The notes: a model not told the origin generated them from the sequence alone. Positions 7,681 through 24,879 are shown, numbered from the stretch's first letter. The stretch: 64,000 nucleotides of DNA from Macrostomum hystrix (GCA_950097015.1 CATNEN010000032.1:2542001-2606000); one strand, 5' to 3'. Translations and numbers: made by a program.

Positions 7681-7768
7681 ATTCTTCAGTTTCAAGAGAC
7701 TTCTCAGGCCGTGGGCCATGAGAGTTGACATTCCTTCAGCAAGTGTCCAAAAGCTATCCTAATCGCAG

Positions 7769-10700
7769 TCAGATAATGCCAGTCTCCCGGATTGGCTGCA
7801 TGGTCTCGAGCCGTTCAAAGCCCATCCGGCTGAGGTCGATGGTCTTGTACCGCCTGAACAGAACCAGCTCGGAGACGGCCCTGCCGATGGCCACGGCGTG
7901 TTGAATGCCGTGACCGGAGGAGCCGTTGCAGAAGATCATATTGTCGTGATACGGATGCCGGCCGATCACCAGGTTCTGGTCGAAGGTGTTGTAATCGTAG
8001 AATCCGGCCCAGGCGTTGCGCACCTTCACGGCCTCCATGCAGGGCACGCGGTGGGCCAGGCGGGGCCACACCTCCTTGTCGAACCAGTCGTAGTCGGGCT
8101 CCAGGTCAACCCCATTACACTCGGGCTCTTCCTGTTGGAGGTGAGATTCAATGAAAGTGTGAGATTCAATGAGGAGGTGAGATTAGGTAAGAACGAGAGA
8201 TTAGTTGCGGAAGTGAGATTAGACACGGAGGTGAGATTAGATGCGTAAGTGAGATTAGATGCGGGGGTGAGATTATATACGGAGGTGAGATTAAATGCGG
8301 AGGTGAGATTAGATGAGAAGGTGAGATTAGATGAGGATGGAGGGGGTTGGGAAGGTGAGATTAGATGAGGACGTGGGTGGGTGAGAAGGTGAGATTATTT
8401 GAGGATGGAGGTGCGTGGGAAGGTGAGATTAGATGAGGATGGAGGGAAGGTGAGATTAGATGAGGATTGAGGCGGGTGGGAAGGTGAGATTAGATGAGGA
8501 CGGAGGTGGGTGGGAAGGTGAGATTAGATGAGGACGGAGGTGGGCGGGAAGGTGAGATTATATGAGGATGGAGATGGGTGGGAAGGTGAGATTAGATGAG
8601 GACGGAGGTGGGTGGGAAGGTGAGATTAGATGAGGATGGAGGTGGGTGGGAAGGTGAGATAAGATGAGGACGGAGGTGGGTGGGAAGGTGAGATTAGATG
8701 AGGACGGAGGTGGGTGGGAAGGTGAGATTATATGAGGATGGAGGTGGGTGGGAAGGTGAGATTATATGAGGATGGAGGTGGGTGGGAAGGTGAGATCAAA
8801 TCAAAATGTAAGCTAAGGGTCAGAGAGGATAGACCGTAGTTTACAGAAGTACAATAAGAGAATAGTTAAAGATATGGACAAAAGGGCATAACTTTAAAGC
8901 ACATTCTTCAAGCGCCAAAAAAAATGATTTTACTTCGTGATTGCGTCCAAAAACGGTTAATCAGCAACGGGGCAAGTATCCTAGCAGCCAAAAATAAAAA
9001 ATGAGTGATTTAGAACAATCGTTATTTTTTCGTCTAGACGCAAAGCATCGACCAATTAAATTCGTTCCACTAAATACTTAATTGCCAGCCCACCTAGCCA
9101 AATTTTGAGTGAGAGAGGAAAACTGACTGCAAAAGAACACATGGACCAATTTTCAGTAGTCGTGTATTTAATTGGAAGGAAACAGATTTCCTGATAGTTT
9201 ACAGCCGAATTGCCTGCTTTGTCCCACCTTTCTAGTCTATTTTTCTATCAATCAAAGTAAAACAATAAGCATAACACTCTACTGACAACTTCTAAGTAGT
9301 AGGATGTTCAGCAAATCGCACTTTAAATTTCCCGGGAGACTTCGAAAACAGGGAGAAAATATTAGCGAGACTGTTAGGACAGCTTGAATTGAAGGCAAAT
9401 GAAATTCTAGAAACACCTCTCTAGAACCTGCAGATCTTCGCTCACCATTCGGTGGCAGAGCGATTAACGTGTTTGTCTCTCGCGCCATGGTCCCTAAGTT
9501 CCAGACGCAGCCGCGGAGAGAAGGCTTGGGGGCTTGTCGTGCAATTTACGCCATTGAGGGCCAACCTCCAAGGCACAGAGAAGTGTACTCTGCCTGACGA
9601 TGAGAAATTCAGGGCAGATGTACACAGCTGTGTGAGCGTGTGCCTGTGTAAACTATCTGTATGCGTGTATGTGCCCAGCAGTGACCAAATTATATCCCAT
9701 AGCCCAGAAGCCCTCCTAAAATTATTATTAAAAAAAAGTACTAAAAAATTGGAAGACTGGTTGAGATTCCTAGAAAAGCTAAATCCTAGCATGTTCTCTC
9801 ACCTATCAAAATTTTTCTAGACACTACTAAAACAGTCTGATAAGTAGCTATGTAGCGAAAGTTTGCCTGAATTTGGTGTCGGCTGTTCATAAGCAACCGC
9901 AGTGATTTTTTGTACCAATGATGCTGCTTCAGTCTGCTGTTGCTGCGGCAGCGGCAGCGGTGGAGGCGGATTCACGTAGGCAACGAAATCGCCTTGAAAT
10001 CCGTCCCGACGCAGGTGCAGGCCGGTGCCGATCTCGTGAATAAACGGCGCGTCAATGCCGGGCGCGGCCGCCGCCGCCTTGGACTTCTTGGCCGCGTGGG
10101 GCGGCAGGCTGACGACAAAGACTGATTGGCGCCTACAATTTGTGAGCAAAGTCTGCGTGGGATGCTGCGAGGCCGGGATGCTGTAGGATCAGTTTAGGAT
10201 CAGGATCTAGATCCCAGATTCTGGGAATACTGTATAGGGATTGTGGATCAGGATTTAGATTCCAGATTCTGGGAATACTGTACAGGGATTTTGGATCAGG
10301 ATCTAGATCCCAGATTCTGGGAATACTGTATAGGGATTGTGGATCAGGATTTAGATTCCAGATTCTGGGAATACTGTACAGGGATTTTGGACCAGGATCT
10401 AGATCCCAGATTCTGGGAATACTGTACAGGGATTTTGGATCAGGATCTAGATCCCAGATTCTGGGAATACTGTATAGGGATTTTGGACCAGGATCTAGAT
10501 CCCAGATTCTGGGAATACTGTACAGGGATTTTGGATCAGGATCTAGATCCCAGATTCTGGGAATACTGTATAGGGATTGTGGATCAGGATTTAGATTTCA
10601 GATTCTGGAAATGCTGTATAGGAATTTAGGATCAGGGTCTAGATCCCAGATTCTGGGAATACTGTATAGGGATTGTGGATCAGGATTTAGATTTCAGATT

Positions 10701-13700
10701 CTGGGAATACTGTACAGGGATTTTGGATCAGGATCTAGATCCCAGATTCTGGAAATGCTGTATAGGAATTTAGGATCAGGGTCTAGATCCCAGATTCTGG
10801 AAATGCTGTATAGGAATTTAGGATCAGGATCTAGATCCCAGATTCTGGGAATACTGTATAGGGATTGTGGATCAGGATCTAGATCCCAGATTCTGGGAAT
10901 ACTATATAGGGATTTTGGATCAGGATCTAGATCCCAGATTCTGGGAATACTATATAGGGATTTTGGATCAGGATCTAGATCCCAGATCCTGGGAATGCTG
11001 TATAGGAATTTAGGATCAGGGTCTAGATCCCAGATTCTGGAAATGCTGTATAGGAATTTAGGATCAGGATCTAGATCCCAGATTCTGGGAATACTGTATA
11101 GGGATTGTGGATCAGGATCTAGATCCCAGATTCTGGGAATACTATATAGGGATTTTGGATCAGGGTCTAGATCCCAGATCCTGGGAATGCTGTATAGGAA
11201 TTTAGGATCAGGGTCTAGATCCCAGATTCTGGAAATGCTGTATAGGAATTTAGGATCAGGGTCTAGATCCCAGATCCTGGAAATGCTGTATAGGAATTTA
11301 GGATCAGGATCTAGATCCCAGATTCTGGAAATGCTGTATAGGAATTTAGGATCAGGGTCTAGATCCCAGATCCTGGAAATGCTGTATAGGAATTTAGGAT
11401 CAGGATCTAGATCCCAGATTCTGGAAATGCTGTATAGGAATTTAGTATCAGGGTCTAGATCCCAGATTCTGGAAATGCTGTATAGGAATTTAGGATCAGG
11501 GTCTAGATCCCAGATTCTGGAAATGCTGTATAGGAATTTAGGATCAGGGTCTAGATCCCAGATTCTGGAAATGCTGTATAGGAATTTAGGATCAGGGTCT
11601 AGATCCCAGATTCTGGAAATGCTGTATAGGAATTTAGGATCAGGGTCTAGATCCCAGATTCTGGAAATGCTGTATAGGAATTTAGGATCAGGGTCTAGAT
11701 CCCATTTTGGGATAGAGAAATGGGATTTAGAATTGTTTCGAAATAGAGCGTGATTCCAGACATGTGTATAGAAACTGGGATTAGAAAGCTAAATAGGGGG
11801 AGCATAAGCTAGTTAAGAATGTCCAACAAATGACTAATTGTATGACTAATGATTTCACCAAAATCTTAAGTACACTCTCAATCCACTAGAAGCTGACCCG
11901 ACTGTTTCCATGACAAATCTAAACAAAAAACCCCAACAAATGCCAGACCAAATCACAACCCGCCTCCTCTAGATTTGACCTTGAAAAATTCTCCATCACG
12001 CCAGCTTGACGTGGGGGAAAATTGAGGAAAATTCAACCGGCCGAAATAGCACCACAAGCAGACTGGAATAGAAAATCGGGGGGGAGACAGGGAAAAATCT
12101 ACGAACAGAACAGAACGGGTGAGGTTGGGATGGCAAACAGACCAATTCGACCTCCAGAGACTAGCATGGCTTACAGCATGGCTTACTAATGCCTATAGTT
12201 GCTTCTGTCAGCATTTTTGGCGACCCGAAAACCTGCCTACAAGGCTTTGGAATTCTGTTAAGAGAAAAACCGAATCCTTAATGAATCCAATCTGCATAAC
12301 TGGCTAAAGTAAAAGTGCATTGCAACATTTCATTAGCTTATCAATCTGGAAAATGGAGTCTCAAAACCAGCTGGGTCTTATCTGAAATTTCTTAGAATAA
12401 ATTTCTGATAAGGAAGAATCAGAAGAACCGTAGGCAGGTGACATTCACCTAGGCCACACCTATTGGTAGCTGGTTAGCTGGCACTGAAGGATAAGAGATT
12501 AGAGAAGACTTTTATTTAATTCTGGACCAGCAGGGCGTGGTCAAGCCAGAGAGGATGCACAAAAGTACATTCCCATAGCTTAAATACAAACTGCGAGAAT
12601 AACGGCAGACGCTGTTGCATAAATCAGAGAGCTAGCAGAAAATGCAATCGGATATCAGCTAATATCTCAATAATACACAGATTGCTTTTGATATTGATTT
12701 TCAAGGAAGATTTTAATGATTACATCACCAAAAATAGTTCAATCAATGCAGGATACCTGATTCTGAATAGCACTGCAATGCGGCTTATTACCCCTAGATT
12801 GTCCCTTGTTACTAGATTATCCTCTCAGCCAATAGCTAGATTATCTCAAAATCAAATCACCCGATTATCCCCACAGCTAATCACTGGATTATCACCTCAG
12901 CTAATCACCGGACTATCTCCTCAGCTAATCACTGGATTATCACCTCAGCTAATCACTGGATTATCTCCTCAGCTAATCACTGGATTATCCCCTTAGCTAA
13001 TCACTGGATTATCCTATCAGTTAATCACTGGATTATCCTATCAGCTAATCACTGGATTATCCCCTTACCTAATCACCAGATTATCCCGTCAGCTAATCAC
13101 TGGATTATATCCTTATTAAATCATTACATTATCCCATCAGCAAATCCATAGATTATCCCCTCAGCCAATCACTGTGTATGTCAGTAAGAGATCACGCAAA
13201 AATATTGTTAAATAAGATCAGGCAGGAATAGCTAGCGGGGGACTGATCCAGCCAGAATTTGTGGGAATACCTTATCGCTCAGCGGCGACATTCCGGCTAT
13301 GTACCTGCCGCCCGGCCCCTCAGATCTGAGGTAGGCACCGGAAGGGCAGCAGAGCAGAGGGGTGGGGTACAGGTCCGCCGGGCAGTGCAGGTGATACACG
13401 TAGCGCAGACTGGGACAGCAAGAATGATTGACAGGGTCACGTTTAGCTCTTTGCCACACCTTCGTAACCAATAGTCTATCCCACACCTGGGAATCCCATA
13501 GTCTATCCCACACCTTGGAATCCCATAGTCTATCCCACACCTGGGAATAGCATAGTCTATCCCACACCTGGGAATAGCATAGTCTATCCCACACCTGGGA
13601 ATCCCATCGTCTATCCCACACCTGGGAATTCCATTGTCTATGCCACACCTGGGAATTCCATTGTCTATGCCACACCTGGGAATTCCATTGTCTATCCCAC

Positions 13701-16700
13701 ACCTGGGAATCCCATAGACTATCCCACACCTGAAGTGCCCATATTCTAGCCCACACCTGAAGTGCCCATATTCTAGCCCACACCTGAAGTAATCTTCCGC
13801 CTGAACCTCCGCTCCTGAAGGCTCAGAGCACTCACCGTGGCTCCACGGGCAGTCTGGTGGCTCCGGCGAAATCGCCCACCCCGGCCAGGTGGGCCACGTG
13901 ACCGGCCCAGGGACCGGCTGCGTTGATCACAACGCTGAAGTTGATGGCGCGCAGATTGTTGTCGGGACACTTCACCTGCGAATTAAGGTTATAGGAGCTT
14001 ATGTGGCTAAGCCTTAGCATACTCATTATCAAATTCTCCCAGATCCTCAATCTACATGAAATTCTCCCAGATCCTCAATCTACCTGGAATTCGACTAGAT
14101 CCTTAATCTGCCTGGAATTCTCCCAGATCCTCAATCTACCTGGAATTCGACCAGATCCTTAATCTACCTGGAATTCGACTAGATCCTTAATCTGCCTGGA
14201 ATTCTCCCAGATCCTCAATCTACCTGGAATTCGACCAGATCCTTAATCTGCCTGGAATTCTCCCAGATCCTCAATCTACCTGGAATTCTCCCAGATCCTC
14301 AATCTACATGGAATTCTTCCAGATCCTCAATCTACATGGAATTCTCCCAGATCCTCAATCTACATGGAATTCTCCCAGATCCTTAATCTACATGGAATTC
14401 GCCCAGATCCTCAATCTATTTTGAATTCGCCCAGATTGAGGATCTACCTGCACTGCTCACCAGGTCCTTACCAGCGCGGCCTTCAGTCGTTTCAGCTCCC
14501 AAAATGTACCATTTTTTTCAAAAGACTGCGTGCCAAACTCGAAGTCGAGAAGTTCTCCAGTCGCGAATCGGACATTTTGAGACACGGATTTGCGCTTGAG
14601 CGCCTGCAGAAACAAGTAGGGATCGAACCAGCCTTCGTTCTCCGAGCCTGCGATCGAGGATGGCGAGGCAACGTTTCAGGGAGTCAGAGTTTAGTGATTG
14701 CTGACCAATTAGAGAAGCCTCAGGTTTATTTTTACTGACCAATCATGGAAGCCTAATCTGATTAACTTCCTGACCAATCAAAGAAGACTAATCTGATTTC
14801 CTTCCTGACCAATCAGAGAAGCCTAATCTGATTTACTTCCTGACCAATCAGAGAATCGCCGGAAAAATATGAAAAAACTCACCGAATGCGCCTAAAGCAA
14901 TGTCGGACACATTCAACCAGGGCCAAGTTTCTTTAATCTTCTCCGGTGAAAGAAGGTCAACTTTTGCGCCAAGTTTCCTAGAAAAAAGGAATGAAGAAAA
15001 GTATTTTATTATTAAACGATTTAATATCAATTCAGAAATTGATACACTTAACAATATTCACCTCTGAACAACATTGTTAGCGCGCAATGTTTCCGCATTG
15101 GCTTCGTCAGCCAGTACCAGGTAACCATGAGGGGCGTAGCAGATGTCAGGTGGGTCCAGGTCTGTGGTAAAAAACATTATATAAGACTAATATAACAATA
15201 GTAATTACACCTGCACCAATAGAGAATAGAGAACACAAACTGAATGATTCATGAGAACACAAACTGAATGATTCATGAGAACACAAACTGAATGATTCAT
15301 GAGAACACAAACTGAATGATTCATGAGAACACAAACTGAAGGATTCATGAGAACACACAAACTGAATGATTCATGAGAACACAAACTGAATGATTCATGA
15401 GAACACAAACTGAAGGATTCATGAGAACACAAACTGAATGATTCATGAGAACACGAACTGAAGGATTCATGAGAACACGAACTGAAGGATTCATGAGAAC
15501 ACAAACTGAATGATTCATGAGAACACAAACTGAAGGATTCATGAGAACACAAACTGAATGATTCATGAGAACACAAACTGAAGGATTCATGAGAACACAA
15601 ACTGAATGATTCATGAGAACACAAACTGAATGATTCATGAGAACACAAACTGAATGATTCATGAGAACACAAACTGAATGATTCATGAGAACACAAACTG
15701 AAGGATTCATGAGAACACACAAACTGAATGATTCATGAGAACACAAACTGAATGATTCATGAGAACACAAACTGAAGGATTCATGAGAACACAAACTGAA
15801 TGATTCATGAGAACACAAACTGAAGGATTCATGAGAACACAAACTGAAGGATTCATGAGAACACAAACTGAATGATTCATGAGAACACAAACTGAAGGAT
15901 TCATGAGAACACAAACTGAAGGATTCATGAGAACACACAAACTGAATGATTCATGAGAACACAAACTGAAGGATTCATGAGAACACAAACTGAATGATTC
16001 ATGAGAACACAAACTGAAGGATTCATGAGAACACAAACTGAATGATTCATGAGAACACAAACTGAAGGATTCATGAGAACACACAAACTGAAGGATTCAT
16101 GAGAACACAAACTGAATGATTCATGAGAACACAAACTGAATGATTCATGAGAACACAAACTGAATGATTCATGAGAACACACAAACTGAAGGATTCATGA
16201 GAACACAAACTGAATGATTCATGAGAACACACAAACTGAAGGATTCATGAGAACACAAACTGAAGGATTCATGAGAACACAAACTGAAGGATTCATGAGA
16301 ACACAAACTGAATGATTCATGAGAACAAATAATGAAGGATTCATGAGAACAAAAACTAAATGATTCATGAGAACACAAACTGAATAATTCATGAGAACAC
16401 ACAAACTGAAGGATTCATGAGAACACAAACTGAATGATTCATGAGAACACACAAACTGAAGGATTCATGAGAACACAAACTGAAGGATTCATGAGAACAC
16501 AAACTGAAGGATTCATGAGAACACAAACTGAATGATTCATGAGAACACAAACTGAATGATTCATGAGAACACACAAACTGAAGGATTCATGAGAACACAA
16601 ACTGAAGGATTCATGAGAACACAAACTGAATGATTCATGAGAACACAAACTGAAGGATTCATGAGAACACAAACTGAATGATTCATGAGAACACAAACTG

Positions 16701-19700
16701 AAGGATTCATGAGAACACAAACTGAAGGATTCATGAGAACACAAACTGAATGATTCATGAGAACACAAACTGAAGGATTCATGAGAACACAAACTGAAGG
16801 ATTCATGAGAACACACAAACTGAATGATTCATGAGAACACAAACTGAAGGATTCATGAGAACACAAACTGAATGATTCATGAGAACACAAACTGAAGGAT
16901 TCATGAGAACACAAACTGAATGATTCATGAGAACACAAACTGAAGGATTCATGAGAACACACAAACTGAAGGATTCATGAGAACACAAACTGAATGATTC
17001 ATGAGAACACAAACTGAATGATTCATGAGAACACAAACTGAATGATTCATGAGAACACACAAACTGAAGGATTCATGAGAACACAAACTGAATGATTCAT
17101 GAGAACACACAAACTGAAGGATTCATGAGAACACAAACTGAAGGATTCATGAGAACACAAACTGAAGGATTCATGAGAACACAAACTGAATGATTCATGA
17201 GAACAAATAATGAAGGATTCATGAGAACAAAAACTAAATGATTCATGAGAACACAAACTGAATAATTCATGAGAACACACAAACTGAAGGATTCATGAGA
17301 ACACAAACTGAATGATTCATGAGAACACACAAACTGAAGGATTCATGAGAACACAAACTGAAGGATTCATGAGAACACAAACTGAAGGATTCATGAGAAC
17401 ACAAACTGAATGATTCATGAGAACAAATAATGAAGGATTCATGAGAACAAAAACTAAATGATTCATGAGAACACAAACTGAATAATTCATGAGAACACAA
17501 ACTGAATGATTCATGAGAACACAAACTAAGGATTCATGAGAACACAAACCGAAGGATACATGAGAACACAAACTGAATGATTCATGAGAACACAAACTAA
17601 GGATTCATGAGAACACAAACTGAAGGATTCATGAGAACACAAACTGAAGGATTCATGAGAACACACAAACTGAATGATTCATGAGAACACAAACTGAAGG
17701 ATTCATGAGAACACAAACTGAATGATTCATGAGAACACAAACTGAAGGATTCATGAGAACACAAACTGAATGATTCATGAGAACACAAACTGAAGGATTC
17801 ATGAGAACACACAAACTGAAGGATTCATGAGAACACAAACTGAATGATTCATGAGAACACAAACTGAATGATTCATGAGAACACAAACTGAATGATTCAT
17901 GAGAACACACAAACTGAAGGATTCATGAGAACACAAACTGAATGATTCATGAGAACACACAAACTGAAGGATTCATGAGAACACAAACTGAAGGATTCAT
18001 GAGAACACAAACTGAAGGATTCATGAGAACACAAACTGAATGATTCATGAGAACAAATAATGAAGGATTCATGAGAACAAAAACTAAATGATTCATGAGA
18101 ACACAAACTGAATAATTCATGAGAACACACAAACTGAAGGATTCATGAGAACACAAACTGAATGATTCATGAGAACACACAAACTGAAGGATTCATGAGA
18201 ACACAAACTGAAGGATTCATGAGAACACAAACTGAAGGATTCATGAGAACACAAACTGAATGATTCATGAGAACAAATAATGAAGGATTCATGAGAACAA
18301 AAACTAAATGATTCATGAGAACACAAACTGAATAATTCATGAGAACACAAACTGAATGATTCATGAGAACACAAACTAAGGATTCATGAGAACACAAACC
18401 GAAGGATACATGAGAACACAAACTGAATGATTCATGAGAACACAAACTAAGGATTCATGAGAACAAAAACTGAAGGATACATGAGAACACAAACTAAGGA
18501 TTCATGAGAACACAAACTAAGGATTCATGAGAACACAAACTAAGGATTCATGAGAACACAAACTAAGGATACATGAGAACACAAACTAAGGATTCATGAG
18601 AACACAAACTAAGGATTCATGAGAACACAAACTGAAGGATACATGAAGACACAAATCGCATTAGAACCCACCGAAGACTGCCAGGTTCTCTTTGATGTTC
18701 CGCAGGAAGTGAGCCCCGAATAGGGACATTTGAATATTCTCGGGCTCAGAGAACTGCTGTCGAATGCCTCCGCAGGACAGCGGGCTGGATGCCCGGGTGT
18801 AGGCTGGGTCCCGCTCCAGCACCACCACCTTGCTAGTGATCTGGCGGCTCAGCCAGTAGGCGACGCTGCAGCCGATGGCGCCGCCGCCGATGACAAGAGC
18901 GTCGCACTCGTCCGGAAAGTCGTCGTCGGTGTCTTTGAAGATTGCGGAATTATAAATTCTGATTATAATCCCGTAATCGTTTTCATATACAAGTTGTATT
19001 GCACCGCCTAACACAGTCCCTCTGAGCTCGATTCCGCGGCGAGACCACACTAATTTGGGGCGTAGTGGTTAGTGAGACTGTACACGGCCTGACGATAAAA
19101 AAGTCTTGGCAGTTGTACAGACGTGTGTGTAAGCGTGCCTGCAGAAGATATCTGTGTGCGTGCGTGTTTAGCAGTCAGCGGAATGGGCCTAATTGCCCCC
19201 TTACTGTGTCACTGACACCAAATTATGTGTTCTCCAGAAAATATTATTAATGTATTTTTGTATGCTCAGGCTGGATCCCTCAGACTGCTCATTTGCTCAG
19301 GCTAGATCCCTCAGACTGCTCATTTGCTCAGGCTAGATCCCTCAGACTGCTCATTTGCTCAGGCTGGATCCCTTAGACTGCTCATTTGCTCAGGCTAGAT
19401 CCCTCAGACTGCTCATTTGCTCAGGCTAGATCCCTCAGACTGCTCATTTGCTCAGGCTGGATCCCTCAGACTGCTCATTTGCTCAGGCTAGATCCCTCAG
19501 ACTGCTCATTTGCTCAGGCTAGATCCCTCAGACTGCTCATTTGCTCAGGCTAGATCCCTCAGACTGCTCATTTGCTCAGGCTAGATCCCTCAGACTGCTC
19601 ATTTGCTCAGGCTAGATCCCTCAGACTGCTCATTTGCTCAGGCTAGATCCCTCAGACTGCTCATTTGCTCAGGCTAGATCCCTCAGACTGCTCATTTGCT

Positions 19701-20193
19701 CAGGCTAGATCCCTCAGACTGCTCATTTGCTCAGGCTAGATCCCTCAGACTGCTCATTTGCTCAGTCTAGATCCCTCAGACTGCTCATTTGCTCAGGCTA
19801 GATCCCTCAGACTGCTCATTTGCTCAGGCTAGATCCCTCAGACTGCTCATTTGCTCATGCTGGATCCCTCAGACTGCTCATTTGCTCAGGCTGGATCCCT
19901 CAGACTGCTCATTTGCTCAGGCTAGATCCCTCAGACTGCTCATTTGCTCAGACGTGATCCCAAAAAATTATCATGTAGTTAGTAGCTCATCCTTTAAACC
20001 AGTCGTTTGCAAACGCACCAACAGCATACGTGGGCTTGCCCTCGACTTTTACGCCCTTCCAGGACGGCTTCTCTACTCGCTCCAGGCCCTGGGTCCGCTT
20101 CGGATCGCCGACAAATCTAGCTCCGGTGCGCGTGCAGAGGTGCCGCACTTGGCAGCCCCATTGGCGAAGGATGCGACCGGCTAGCTGCTGCAA
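7769..20193 (-). CDS. FOXRED1: FAD-dependent oxidoreductase domain-containing protein 1 (complex I assembly factor), 8 exons, ~482 aa
   Basis: Exons 20193-20019, 18932-18672, 15161-15062, 14977-14883, 14647-14472, 13975-13836, 13409-13271 and 8131-7769 join in frame with GT/AG sites (1449 nt). Motifs: LVIGGGAIGCSVAYWL (GxGxxG), RASSPLSCGGIRQQFSEPENIQMSLFG, GSENEGWFDPY, VINAAGPWAG, LPVEPR, WAGFYDYNTFDQN, GSSGHGIQHA and C-terminal ETGII. The start (TTG at 20193) and the first donor are less certain. Confidence 0.93.
8135..8800. repeat. 18-bp then 34-bp minisatellite sharing GGTGAGATTAGATG
   Basis: Tandem units abutting the FOXRED1 last-exon acceptor. Confidence 0.9.
9445..9710 (+). mobile_element. 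SINE-like element copy (B-box region deleted), in a FOXRED1 intron
   Basis: TGGCAGAGCGATTAA head, with a body that aligns to the reverse complement of 24880-25185. Confidence 0.6.
9916..10132 (-). CDS. Candidate alternative (duplicated) FOXRED1 exon 7b
   Basis: Open, GC-rich exon with acceptor tgtag|G (phase 2) and donor TTG|gtacaa (phase 0), the same phases as exon 13409-13271. Its peptide RQSVFVVSLP..PGIDAPFIHEIGTGLHLRRDGFQGDF aligns to the FOXRED1 [35 protein letters not shown] segment (human sequence recalled). A second same-phase acceptor lies at 10180. Confidence 0.6.
10190..11705. repeat. 48-bp minisatellite (GGATCAGGATCTAGATCCCAGATTCTGGGAATACTGTATAGGGATTGT)
   Basis: About 31 units; the ORFs with 16-aa periodicity are artefacts. 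Confidence 0.95.
12830..13170. repeat. 24-bp minisatellite (CTAATCACTGGATTATCCCCTCAG)
   Basis: Tandem units. Confidence 0.88.
13465..13790. repeat. 30/27-bp minisatellite (CTATCCCACACCTGGGAATCCCATAGT)
   Basis: Fills the FOXRED1 intron 13410-13835. Confidence 0.88.
14025..14445. repeat. 28-bp minisatellite (AGATCCTCAATCTACCTGGAATTCTCCC)
   Basis: Fills the FOXRED1 intron 13976-14471. Confidence 0.9.
14695..14852. repeat. 35-bp repeat x5, each unit with a CCAAT box
   Basis: CCAAT at 14705, 14739, 14774, 14809 and 14844. Confidence 0.8.
15230..18655. repeat. 24-bp satellite (GAACACAAACTGAATGATTCATGA), ~140 units, with 878/850-bp higher-order repeats
   Basis: Direct units; identical ORF translations recur at offsets of 878 and 850. 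Confidence 0.97.
19008..19200 (+). mobile_element. Diverged SINE-like copy with internal deletion
   Basis: cagtccctctgagctcgattccgcggcgagaccacactaatttggggcg and gtacacggcctgacgataaaaaag align to the family. Confidence 0.45.
19258..19950. repeat. 31-bp minisatellite (GCTCAGGCTAGATCCCTCAGACTGCTCATTT)
   Basis: About 22 highly homogeneous units. Confidence 0.95.
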
Positions 20194-23310: not shown

Positions 23311-23712
23311 TCAGTAGCCGGAATTGGTCAGGGCCTCTTTGATCTTGGCGGCGGCGAAGTTGACGCGCTGACAGCCGGCCATGGAGGCCTGCTCGCCTTC
23401 GTCGGCCAGGTAGGCACCGACAATCACGGCCTGGCCGGTCCGCATCGCCGACAGGCTGGAGGCGCCGCAGCGGGCGTCGACTTCGCCGTCCTGCAGTCGC
23501 AGGGTCATGAAGCGCCGGCCCTGGAAGGTGAAGGCTGAGAACTCGCCGGCGCTGCCGCGGCCAGTACCGGCCACCAGGGCCTGCACCTCGGCGGCGCTAG
23601 GGCTGCAGTTGGCCGACTGGGCCCAGGTTGAACCGTCCAGGCCGAAGATGGCGGCAATGTTGACGCCCGGATACTGCATCATGTTGTCAACCCAAGGCTG
23701 CCAGGAGGACAT
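23311..23712 (-). CDS. PFN: Profilin, 133 aa, single coding exon
   Basis: MSSWQPWVDNMM N-terminus, AAIFGLDGSTWAQS, FTFQGRRFMTLR, RTGQAVIVGAY and C-terminal ALTNSGY form the typical profilin pattern. An acceptor-like ttctgcag lies just upstream of the ATG. Confidence 0.9.
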   Translation of the reverse strand: MSSWQPWVDNMMQYPGVNIAAIFGLDGSTWAQSANCSPSAAEVQALVAGTGRGSAGEFSAFTFQGRRFMTLRLQDGEVDARCGASSLSAMRTGQAVIVGAYLADEGEQASMAGCQRVNFAAAKIKEALTNSGY

Positions 23713-24879
23713 GTCTGGTAGTTGGCTGCAGAATTCAGTATTCACTAATTACTGGCTTATTGTTAAACTTGCTTAACAATGTGAGACCGAACTTTAATTA
23801 TCACTTCAAAACTTAACTGATTTTAGCATTCTAACAGTAGGACCACCAAGCCATTTTGCAGCCCGTTTTTCTACTAAGGGGGGAAATTAGACAATTATTT
23901 TGCTGCACCCGAACGGACCAATCACACCAAACTTGAGAACAAGGGCCTAATTTATTTGTTACACATCTTCTGAAACGTAAATCAATTCGCCAAACTGATT
24001 ATAACTTGCCAAATCTGTATTTTCAGCTCAGGTATTTTTTCTTGAGTTCACCTGTGACTGTGTACATTGAATTGCATGTATAGCATGTCTTAAATGTACA
24101 TCTATGGCAGACTGCCAAACTGGCAAGTCTTTACAGTTTTTAAAACTACAAGTTACCTATTGAGATGCCTCCAACATTGCTTTCTGAATCACATGCAAGT
24201 AGTTTATGACTGCTTGTCTGCAGTGGCCAGCAGAATAGAGGACTATGTAGTGATCTAGCAGAGTGACTTTTCCTATTATAAGTAATTCTAGCATGTCATG
24301 TGTCATGGCATGAGTGGAAGGTCACTTTTTCTATCAAAAAAAACTCACAAAAAATTAATTTTAAATTGTCAATCATCTTGATCTGCACCTATTAATTCCT
24401 TGGGAAAAAAAGCAAAACAATGTTCCAATTCTGTTGGCAAGTCACTTTTGGCTGACGACCATCTTTCTAAGACAACAAAATATTTATGCCCTCACTTTGA
24501 TGCAACACAGTGGTGGTGCACTCTTATGACAAAAGGCTTAAGAAAACTTAAACATATATAATAAAAGTGTATATAGCAGGTCCCTTTTGGCAGCCTATTC
24601 TAGAAAGGCATCACCACTCAGTGCCCTCCTAGACCTTTGCACTCTAGAGGCCCCACTTAAGCTGTGATTGGCCCCTGGGGCACTGCAGGTTGCAACAAAT
24701 GAGCTAGCTGATGCAGTAGCATAGCCAATACCAGTGCACCAATCTCACTATGTAGCATGAAAGCAGCCATCTGATGCCAACTCACTGACCCACCTATCTT
24801 GCATATTCTGGACAGCAGCCTCTTAATAATAATAATAATTGCAGGAGGGCTGCAGGCTGTGGCACATCACTTAGTGACA

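What the first reader, a model, noticed from the sequence alone, without database searches (positions are those of the whole stretch)
9916..13409. Ancient duplicated exon pair in FOXRED1: candidate mutually exclusive splicing of a complex I assembly factor
Seen: the intron after exon 7 (13409-13271; 139 nt, phase 2 to 0) contains a second open exon (10132-9916; 217 nt, phase 2 to 0). Upstream LPVEP-CG splices in frame to either exon (R-LRYVYHLHCP or R-RQSVFVVSLP), and either joins the last exon (EEPECNG). Both lengths are 1 mod 3, so including both or neither frameshifts, which is typical of mutually exclusive exons. The 7b peptide (PGIDAPFIHEIGTGLHLRRDGFQGDFVAYVNP) aligns to the same FOXRED1 segment (human [31 protein letters not shown], recalled) but is very divergent from 7a, with AAAAA and PPPP/QQQQ insertions. 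In DAO-family oxidoreductases this segment lies in the substrate-binding domain, so two isoforms could differ in ligand or partner. I know of no such isoform switch in FOXRED1. The 7b donor (gtacaa) is weak.
Basis: partly seen in the sequence, partly recalled or inferred. Interest (0 to 1): 0.76.

Follow-up and report, generated by a model that had tools for sequence, protein, structure and literature searches.

The report
Two alternative FOXRED1 exons in flatworm
A free-living flatworm (Macrostomum) gene for the mitochondrial complex I assembly factor FOXRED1 has two interchangeable versions of one exon; both appear in spliced RNA, both are conserved, they encode strands lining the enzyme's flavin pocket, and the odd version is the only one found in flukes and tapeworms.

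Summary

- **Gene and exons.** On the minus strand lies a FOXRED1 orthologue of a Macrostomum flatworm. Exon 7a (13409-13271, 139 nt) and exon 7b (10132-9916, 217 nt) both encode the same FOXRED1 segment. They score 54.0 and 23.6 bits against a profile of 120 non-flatworm orthologues, and 0 of 1000 shuffles reach either score.
- **RNA.** Run X4 holds spliced contigs for 6→7a, 7a→8, 6→7b and 7b→8, all GT..AG, at similar depth. No 7a→7b joint is listed.
- **Reading frame.** Including both exons, or neither, shifts the frame into a stop.
- **Conservation.** All three M. lignano gene copies keep both exons open, in the same order and with the same splice sites. dN/dS is about 0.055 for 7a and 0.08 for 7b, while synonymous sites are saturated. 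All three RNA-seq-derived M. lignano gene models use 7b.
- **Age.** 7b groups (99/93) with the single exon 7 of flukes and tapeworms and one unidentified flatworm-side sequence. In four neodermatan loci I found no canonical copy. The duplication therefore probably predates the split between Macrostomum and the parasites, but a younger duplication is not formally rejected (AU p 0.13).
- **Structure.** The swapped segment aligns to sarcosine oxidase residues 222-273, which include Y254, K265 and H269.
- **Novelty.** This is a new member of a known kind. The scan has already noted other duplicated alternative exons in this genome, but none in FOXRED1.
- **Unknown.** What the two forms do differently, and what controls the choice between them.

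The parts
13836..13975 (-). FOXRED1 exon 6 (constitutive). It encodes VKCPDNN...LPVEP and ends with the bases CG, the first two of the Arg codon completed by the first base of 7a or 7b.
   Evidence: Sequence and translation. X4 contig of 965 nt covers it, and joints run to 13409 and to 10132. 83% aa identity to M. lignano.
13271..13409 (-). Exon 7a, 139 nt, the canonical-type alternative exon (LRYVYHLHCPADLYPTPLLCCPSGAYLRSEGPGGRYIAGMSPLSDK).
   Evidence: Translation. 54.0 bits to the canonical FOXRED1 exon-7 profile. Joints 13836|13409 (X4) and 13271|8131 (X3, X4). 80-83% aa identity and dN/dS about 0.055 against M. lignano. Donor gtattccc is conserved.
9916..10132 (-). Exon 7b, 217 nt, the divergent flatworm-type alternative exon (RQSVFVVSLPPHAAKK...PGIDAPFIHEIGTGLHLRRDGFQGDFVAYVNPPPP...), with a low-complexity tail.
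   Evidence: Translation. 23.6 bits to the canonical profile and 20.7 bits to the trematode-type profile. Joints 13836|10132 (depth 26.3) and 9916|8131 (depth 17.7) in X4. Present in all three annotated M. lignano proteins. dN/dS about 0.08. Groups with neodermatan exon 7 at 99/93.
7769..8131 (-). Last coding exon (exon 8): EEPECNG...GSSGHG...ETGII plus the stop codon. This is the C-terminal part of the DAO domain.
   Evidence: Translation. Pfam DAO at 2e-10. 90-91% identity to M. lignano. Joints from both 7a and 7b.
8139..8796 (-). Pyrimidine-rich tandem repeat (units of about 18-34 nt, 'aatctcacc...cccacccacctcc') directly upstream of the exon 8 acceptor. It is the only intronic sequence alignable with M. 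lignano. It may be a splicing-regulatory or branch-point/polypyrimidine element; that reading is inference.
   Evidence: TRF. blastn of the window against L006 aligns only exons plus this repeat (window 8229-8796 with L006 11808-12066).
14472..20158 (-). Upstream constitutive exons of the same gene. Approximate positions: exon 1 about 20158-20008, exon 2 about 18940-18672 (GxGxxG FAD motif), exon 3 15161-15062, exon 4 14977-14883, exon 5 14647-14472.
   Evidence: ORFs and sequence. Pfam DAO N-terminal match. tblastn and blastn to M. lignano loci. The loose end at 13980 reads into the end of exon 5.

Best explanation
This is the FOXRED1 orthologue of a Macrostomum flatworm. It carries a tandemly duplicated exon 7 that is spliced in a mutually exclusive way.

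**Shown.** Exon 6 joins either 7a or 7b, and either joins exon 8. Both exons are kept under strong purifying selection in a second, deeply diverged Macrostomum species. Each is 1 mod 3, so only 'exactly one' keeps the frame. With both included there is a stop inside 7b, upstream of the last junction. With neither included there is a stop early in exon 8.

**Inferred.** Mis-spliced products are removed by nonsense-mediated decay or yield a truncated, inactive protein. The choice between exons is made by competition between the non-consensus donors of 7a (GTATTC) and 7b (GTAC) and their acceptors, perhaps helped by the conserved pyrimidine-rich repeat in front of exon 8.

**The two proteins.** They differ only in a 46 or 72 residue block that forms three beta strands and loops of the substrate-binding domain. 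These strands line the flavin pocket and align with MSOX Y254, K265 and H269.
- 7a keeps the pan-metazoan sequence (YVY.HCP...GxYIxGxSP).
- 7b carries the flatworm-type sequence (VFVV, an 8-20 residue insert, GDFVxY, and a Pro/Gln tail).

**Evolution (inferred from tree, shared insert and loci).** The duplication arose before Macrostomorpha split from the line leading to flukes and tapeworms. The parasites kept only the 7b type; Macrostomum kept both.

The likely consequence is two FOXRED1 isoenzymes with different pocket or partner specificity. What differs biochemically is not known.
For: - **Junction contigs.** In X4: 6->7a and 7a->8 at depth 24.8, 6->7b at 26.3, 7b->8 at 17.7, all GT..AG. 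7a->8 is also seen in X3. Introns lie at depth 0-6 against exons at 25-100.
- **Homology of both exons to the FOXRED1 segment.** 54.0 and 23.6 bits, 0 of 1000 shuffles.
- **M. lignano.** Both exons are open in the order 6-7a-7b-8 in L001, L002 and L006. The splice sites are the same and the lengths are 139 and 205 nt, both 1 mod 3. dN/dS is 0.055 and 0.08 with pS 0.64-0.71, like constitutive exons at 0.02-0.15. At DNA level only exons align between the species.
- **M. lignano proteins.** PAA71416.1, PAA49751.1 and the Mlig001411g1 product all contain 7b. That annotation derives from RNA-seq-guided transcript assembly (PMC5730564).
- **Frame.** Stops occur with both or neither exon included.
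- **Fold.** The AF2 model of the M. lignano 7b isoform has pLDDT 85.9. The 7b core (residues 312-362) is at 88-94 and the tail is disordered. The best PDB match is 1y56_B, TMt 0.88.
- **Active-site mapping.**
- **Age.** The tree bipartition {7b, P0278, 10 Neodermata} against {7a, 17 canonical} has support 99/93. The insert and tail are shared. The intron phase is the same. S. mansoni, S. rodhaini, O. felineus and E. multilocularis loci hold one exon 7 only.
Against: - Only one run (X4, kind not on record) shows 7b spliced, and it is laid as contigs. Contigs cannot prove absence of a 7a+7b form, give reliable ratios, or show that both forms come from one locus.
- X1-X3 show only 7a joined to exon 8, and X1 reads through the 7b donor unspliced.
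- No M. lignano protein with 7a is in the databases searched.
- The AU test does not reject 7a+7b as a clade (p 0.13; 46 columns).
- No competing RNA structure or conserved selector was found, so the choice mechanism is inference.
- No functional data exist for either isoform.
Confidence: 0.88

Rival explanations
1. The duplication is young and specific to Macrostomum. 7b diverged fast, and its likeness to the exon 7 of flukes and tapeworms is convergence or long-branch attraction. The splicing is real, but the pair is not 'ancient' beyond the genus.
For: The AU test does not reject 7a+7b as one clade (lnL 16 lower, p 0.13) on only 46 columns. Some non-flatworm FOXRED1 proteins also show SVFVF-like starts and inserts (P0051, P0117).
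Against: - The free tree supports 7b with the Neodermata at 99/93.
- Characters not used in the tree agree: the insert before PG[IL]D, GDF/GEF in place of GNY, and the tail.
- The 7b type is scored by a trematode-only profile at 20.7 bits, against -1.7 for 7a.
- With exon 7 removed, the rest of the protein gives the expected flatworm grouping (98*), so the 7b type tracks flatworm phylogeny.
Confidence: 0.1
2. The two exons are not alternatives within one gene. Near-identical gene copies (Macrostomum genomes are partly duplicated) have divided the work, with one copy always using 7a and the other always 7b.
For: M. lignano has at least three copies (L001, L002, L006). The X4 7b contig differs from the window by a 9-nt insertion and one base. 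Short contigs cannot link exon choice to a locus.
Against: - Every genomic copy seen (the window plus three M. lignano loci) keeps both exons open with intact splice sites.
- Both exons are under purifying selection across species. A permanently unused exon would decay.
- At position 9933 a second X4 contig without the insertion is the one joined to exon 8, so both alleles of 7b are spliced.
- The exon 6 and exon 8 flanks of all junction contigs match the window.
Confidence: 0.05
3. 7b inclusion is splicing noise or a regulatory unproductive event, not a protein-coding isoform.
For: The 7b donor is weak (GTAC). 7b has a low-complexity tail with indel polymorphism. X1-X3 show no spliced 7b.
Against: - 7b inclusion is in frame.
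- dN/dS is 0.08 over 65 codons with saturated synonymous sites.
- 7b folds confidently into the DAO domain.
- It is the form annotated in M. lignano and the only form found in Neodermata.
- Its depth in X4 equals that of 7a.
Confidence: 0.02

Closest known systems
Tandem-duplicated, mutually exclusive exon substitutions in animals (for example human ATE1 7a/7b and SCN alpha 5a/5b; surveys PMC9741552, PMC5740500, PMC9013439, PMC7797038, seen)
   Same: Two adjacent homologous exons swap a homologous protein block. Each alone preserves the frame. The pair is old, conserved and under purifying selection.
   Different: The gene (FOXRED1) is not among those I found described, and searches for FOXRED1 or Macrostomum with 'mutually exclusive' gave nothing relevant. 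The exon lengths differ (139 and 217 nt). No competing RNA structures like those of ATE1 were found. One copy became the sole exon in descendant parasite lineages.
Other duplicated alternative exons noted by this scan in the same Macrostomum genome (SERCA, KCNQ, unc-13, SNAP-25, nAChR, PICK1)
   Same: Same genome and same architecture. Several of them are also shared with flukes or tapeworms.
   Different: Those are membrane or synaptic proteins. This one is a mitochondrial flavoenzyme-like assembly factor. Here both junction pairs are seen in RNA, whereas several of those notes report only one copy in use.
Human/vertebrate FOXRED1, a complex I assembly factor of the DAO/sarcosine-oxidase-like family (function from established knowledge and source names)
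   Same: Orthologous protein: 39-49% identity over the full length for M. lignano P0152. DAO domain. 7a keeps the canonical exon-7 sequence.
   Different: Vertebrate and other non-flatworm orthologues examined show one canonical exon-7 segment. The 7b type is flatworm-specific.
Monomeric sarcosine oxidase (1el5) and P. horikoshii L-proline dehydrogenase beta (1y56_B)
   Same: Same fold (Foldseek E 3.5e-29, TMt 0.88). The exon-7 block aligns to MSOX 222-273, which includes Y254, K265 and H269.
   Different: 16-23% identity. K265 and H269 are not conserved in FOXRED1 (Y/F and a variable residue). No catalytic activity is established for FOXRED1.

Membership tests
FOXRED1 orthologue (DAO-family FAD oxidoreductase) | Pfam DAO (PF01266) domain with an N-terminal GxGxxG dinucleotide-binding motif and a C-terminal part | tested here: met
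   The exon 2 ORF matches DAO positions 1-78 (6.4e-12) and the last exon matches 280-353 (2e-10). VIGGGAIG is in the exon 2 ORF.
FOXRED1 orthologue (DAO-family FAD oxidoreductase) | Closest relatives across animals are the proteins named FOXRED1, and the gene tree follows the species grouping | tested here: met
   Hits are named FAD-dependent oxidoreductase domain-containing protein 1 from flatworms to vertebrates. The flatworm side is separated at 98* with exon 7 removed.
FOXRED1 orthologue (DAO-family FAD oxidoreductase) | Role in mitochondrial complex I assembly | not testable with these tools
   Known for the human protein only. No data exist for flatworms.
Mutually exclusive exons from tandem exon duplication | Neighbouring exons that are homologous to each other and to the same segment of the protein | tested here: met
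   Profile scores 54.0 and 23.6 bits, 0 of 1000 shuffles. Same intron phase. Only two copies lie in the gene.
Mutually exclusive exons from tandem exon duplication | Transcripts contain one or the other: upstream exon to each, each to the downstream exon, and not both | tested here: met
   Four joints are in X4 and no 7a->7b joint is listed. Caveat: these are contigs of one run, and contigs show presence, not absence.
Mutually exclusive exons from tandem exon duplication | Both copies conserved as coding sequence in other species | tested here: met
   Three M. lignano loci, with dN/dS 0.055 and 0.08.
MXE clusters controlled by competing RNA structures (docking/selector type) | Conserved intronic complementary sequences next to the alternative exons | tested here: not met
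   No inverted repeat of 16 nt or more (seed 10) lies in 7700-14500. No conserved intronic sequence exists except the repeat before exon 8. Short or imperfect pairings were not searched.
Frame/NMD-enforced mutual exclusion | Double inclusion or double skipping creates a premature stop | tested here: met
   The stop comes after 26 codons of 7b (window) and 51 codons (M. lignano) with both included, and after 34 codons of exon 8 with both skipped. Actual decay of such RNAs was not testable.

The most novel reading that the evidence does not exclude
The 7a/7b switch sets the specificity of the FOXRED1 flavin pocket for two respiratory states. 7a would be the ancestral aerobic form. 7b would be a flatworm invention tied to the low-oxygen, rhodoquinone-using complex I physiology that parasitic flatworms rely on. 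That would explain why parasites kept only 7b, while the free-living, sediment-dwelling Macrostomum toggles between both. If so, natural isoforms would point to the long-unknown ligand or substrate of FOXRED1.
Probability: 0.07. Interest if true: 0.75.

Novelty: new member of a known kind. Interest (0 to 1): 0.55.

Why it matters
FOXRED1 is a human mitochondrial-disease gene. Its oxidoreductase-like pocket has no known substrate, and it is unclear whether that pocket matters for complex I assembly.

Here evolution has kept, over a very long time, two versions of exactly the strands that line the flavin site. It then fixed the derived version in all flukes and tapeworms examined. This argues that the pocket or surface is functionally important. 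It also gives a natural pair of variants to compare biochemically.

It also adds a metabolic, mitochondrial example to the mostly neuronal and membrane-protein catalogue of ancient duplicated alternative exons. And it shows an alternative exon becoming constitutive after loss of its partner.

Tried and rejected
- **Word search with the 7b peptide alone.** No hits. The length window excludes full-length proteins.
- **Pfam on single exons 6, 7a and 7b.** No hits, because the peptides are too short. I replaced this with my own exon-7 profiles.
- **Direct 7a/7b pairwise alignment.** Only weakly significant.
- **Inverted repeats and competing RNA structure.** None found.
- **A third exon copy, or a canonical exon 7, in fluke and tapeworm loci.** None above 8 bits.
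- **Genomic locus of P0278.** Not on record, so its species stays unknown.
- **AU test to exclude a Macrostomum-only duplication.** Not significant.
- **ARAGORN tRNA calls inside the 48-bp satellite.** Spurious.
- **Literature.** Nothing on FOXRED1 or Macrostomum mutually exclusive exons.
- **Two translate calls.** Failed on coordinate order and were repeated correctly.
- **Joined models.** The only full-length isoform folded was the database protein P0152 of M. lignano.
Full report
**What is in the sequence.**
- Exon 6 (13975-13836) ends ...LPVEP plus the bases CG.
- Exon 7a (13409-13271, 139 nt) supplies the third base of that Arg codon and then LRYVYHLHCPADLYPTPLLCCPSGAYLRSEGPGGRYIAGMSPLSDK.
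- Exon 7b (10132-9916, 217 nt) does the same and then gives RQSVFVVSLPPHAAKKSKAAAAAPGIDAPFIHEIGTGLHLRRDGFQGDFVAYVNPPPPLPLPQQQQTEAASL.
- The last exon (8131-7769) starts EEPECNG.
- All four boundaries are AG/GT.
- The rest of the gene lies upstream. Exons 1-5 fall between about 20158 and 14472, and their introns are filled with minisatellites.
- The first and last parts match Pfam DAO.

**Is 7b more than chance?**
The two peptides resemble each other only weakly (score 38, reached by 7 of 2000 shuffles). I therefore built a profile of the exon-7 segment from 120 non-flatworm FOXRED1 proteins.
- 7a scores 54.0 bits and 7b 23.6 bits. The best of 1000 shuffles of each is about 8 bits.
- A six-frame scan of the whole gene finds exactly these two copies and no third.

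**RNA.**
One search for runs and one laying of reads were allowed.
- Run X4 is near-identical to the window. Its exons lie at depth 25-100 and its introns at 0-6, so it behaves as RNA-seq, although its kind is not on record.
- X4 holds four spliced contigs:
  - 13836|13409, depth 24.8
  - 13271|8131, depth 24.8 (also in X3 at 14.1)
  - 13836|10132, depth 26.3, 31 nt on the shorter side
  - 9916|8131, depth 17.7, 28 nt on the shorter side
- All four have GT..AG ends on the gene strand. No 7a-to-7b joint is listed.
- Two 7b alleles are present, with and without a 9-nt in-frame CAG-type insertion in the Gln run. The form without the insertion is the one joined to exon 8.
- X1 shows 7a joined to exon 8, as a loose end that matches the end of 7a. 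It also holds a low-depth contig reading through the 7b donor, which is unspliced RNA or DNA.
- Contigs show presence, not absence or ratios. I therefore say only that both forms exist and have similar contig depth in X4.

**Frame logic.**
Both exons are 1 mod 3.
- Read after 7a, 7b runs into a stop after 26 codons. In M. lignano the stop comes after 51 codons.
- With both exons skipped, exon 8 stops after 34 codons and loses the conserved GSSGHG C-terminus.
- Only 'exactly one' gives a full protein.
- Removal of the wrong products by nonsense-mediated decay is inferred, not shown.

**Whose gene is it?**
A full phmmer search with the last exon found one close relative at 91% identity, and the next best at only 56-58%.
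- The close relative and its cluster mate are Macrostomum lignano proteins PAA71416.1 and PAA49751.1, named FOXRED1 by UniRef.
- A third M. lignano model, Mlig001411g1 (P0152, 499 aa), is nearly full length.
- All three contain a 7b-type exon between exon 6 and exon 8.
- The GenBank annotation of that assembly comes from a genome-guided RNA-seq transcript assembly (PMC5730564). This is independent RNA evidence for 7b use in a second species.
- Earlier notes of this scan also call the genome Macrostomum and list other duplicated alternative exons in it, none in FOXRED1.

**Conservation.**
I fetched the three M. lignano loci (L001, L002, L006).
- Each has both exons, open, in the order 6-7a-7b-8. 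A profilin gene lies upstream, as in the window.
- Amino-acid identity is 80-83% for 7a and 78% for 7b. Constitutive exons range from 71% to 94%.
- Nei-Gojobori estimates give pS 0.64-0.71, which is saturated. dN/dS is about 0.055 for 7a and 0.08 for 7b, inside the range of the constitutive exons (0.02-0.15).
- At DNA level only exons align between the species, plus one repeat.
- Splice sites are conserved, including the unusual donors: gtattccc after 7a and gtac after 7b.
- 7b is 205 nt in M. lignano, again 1 mod 3.

**How old?**
In an alignment of orthologues, every non-flatworm protein has the canonical KRYVYV.HCP.GPGLD...GNYICG.SP.
- All flukes (Schistosoma, Fasciola, Opisthorchis, Paragonimus, Calicophoron, Trichobilharzia), all tapeworms (Echinococcus, Taenia, Hydatigera, Schistocephalus) and one unidentified UniParc sequence (P0278) have a 7b-like segment instead.
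- That segment has [KR]Q.[IV]FVV, an insert of 8-20 residues before PG[IL]D, G[DE]F in place of GNY, and [YCF] in place of the Gly.
- A trematode-only profile scores 7b at 20.7 bits and 7a at -1.7.
- A maximum-likelihood tree of the 46 shared columns separates {7b x2, P0278, 10 Neodermata} from {7a x2, 17 canonical} with support 99/93.
- The insert and the tail were not among those columns, so they are additional shared characters.
- The intron before the exon sits in the same Arg codon in all of them.
- With the exon-7 columns removed, the rest of the protein still puts Macrostomum, P0278 and the Neodermata on one side at 98*.
- The loci of S. rodhaini, S. mansoni, O. felineus and E. multilocularis contain one exon 7 only, with no canonical-type piece above 8 bits.
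- The simplest reading is one duplication before Macrostomorpha split from the neodermatan line, early divergence of 7b, and later loss of 7a in the parasites.
- The AU test cannot formally exclude a Macrostomum-only duplication (lnL 16 lower, p 0.13). I give that rival about 0.1.

**What the swap changes.**
An AlphaFold2 model of the M. lignano 7b isoform (P0152, 60-sequence alignment) has mean pLDDT 85.9.
- The 7b core (residues 312-362) forms a strand, a short helix in the AAKKAA insert, and three more strands, at pLDDT 88-94.
- The Pro/Gln-rich tail is disordered.
- The model matches L-proline dehydrogenase beta 1y56_B (E 3.5e-29, TMt 0.88), as well as DMGDH and sarcosine and glycine oxidases.
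- In HMMER alignments of a canonical orthologue to monomeric sarcosine oxidase, the exon-7 block corresponds to MSOX residues 222-273.
- The numbering is checked by the K265M and H269N mutant chains in the same output. PDB titles show that Y254, K265 and H269 are the studied active-site residues.
- At those aligned positions the forms read:

| Form | Strand aligned to MSOX Y253-Y254 | Strand aligned to MSOX K265-T270 |
|---|---|---|
| Canonical | Y-F | Y-I-C-G-x-S |
| 7a | Y-L | Y-I-A-G-M-S |
| 7b | H-L | F-V-A-Y-V-N |

- The alternative exon therefore re-tools strands lining the flavin pocket.
- Whether it changes a ligand, a redox property or a partner surface is unknown.

**Mechanism of choice.**
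I found no inverted repeats of 16 nt or more in 7700-14500.
- The only conserved intronic sequence is a pyrimidine-rich repeat directly upstream of exon 8, in both species.
- My working model is competition between weak splice sites plus frame surveillance, possibly with that repeat as a binding platform. This is inference.

**Comparison and novelty.**
The architecture is the well-known tandem-exon-duplication type of mutually exclusive splicing (papers). It is common in this genome.
- I found no report of it in FOXRED1 or of mutually exclusive exons in Macrostomum.
- It is therefore a new member of a known kind.
- The added points of interest are that the swapped block lines the flavin pocket of an enzyme-like assembly factor whose substrate is unknown, and that the derived exon became the only one in parasitic flatworms.

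**Limits.**
- One run shows 7b spliced, and it is laid as contigs.
- There is no tissue or condition information.
- The species of the window and of P0278 are not named.

Noticed in passing
window 8139-8796 (minus strand); L006 11808-12066: A pyrimidine-rich tandem repeat ('aatctcacc...cccacccacctcc') directly upstream of the last FOXRED1 exon is the only intronic sequence that aligns between this species and M. lignano, although synonymous sites are saturated. Its units carry branch-point-like CUAAU and C/U runs.
   Followed up: partly
window 9469-9668 and about 19010-19200: A dispersed repeat inside the 7b-8 intron has contig depth above 2000 in run X4. It has many loose ends with a tRNA-like 'GTTCGATTCCGCGGCGAGGCCA' end. 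A related copy lies upstream of exon 2. It looks like an abundant, transcribed SINE-like family.
   Followed up: partly
L002 9962-10057; L001 between about 10032 and 12890: Two of the three M. lignano FOXRED1 copies look damaged or misassembled. L002 has an in-frame stop in exon 4, and L001 gives no exon 5 match. Both still keep 7a and 7b open.
   Followed up: no
window 23311-23745 (-); L001 5747-6163, L002 5864-6280, L006 2470-2895: A profilin gene lies just upstream of FOXRED1 in the window and in all three M. lignano loci, so synteny is conserved.
   Followed up: no
window 9933 (+ strand coordinate), inside exon 7b: An in-frame 9-nt insertion (CTGCTGTTG on the + strand, three extra residues in the Gln run) occurs in about half of the X4 depth and in X1. 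It is a length polymorphism in the disordered tail of 7b.
   Followed up: partly
window 14735-14855; L006 6557-6627: The 35-bp intron-4 repeat shares an exact 16-mer ('ctgattggtcaggaag'-type) with repeats at the equivalent M. lignano intron. This is a second case of a conserved intronic satellite in this gene.
   Followed up: no
window 10220-10315 and 10652-10747: ARAGORN calls two 'tRNA-Leu' genes inside the 48-bp satellite between 7a and 7b. They are almost certainly false positives of the repeat.
   Followed up: partly
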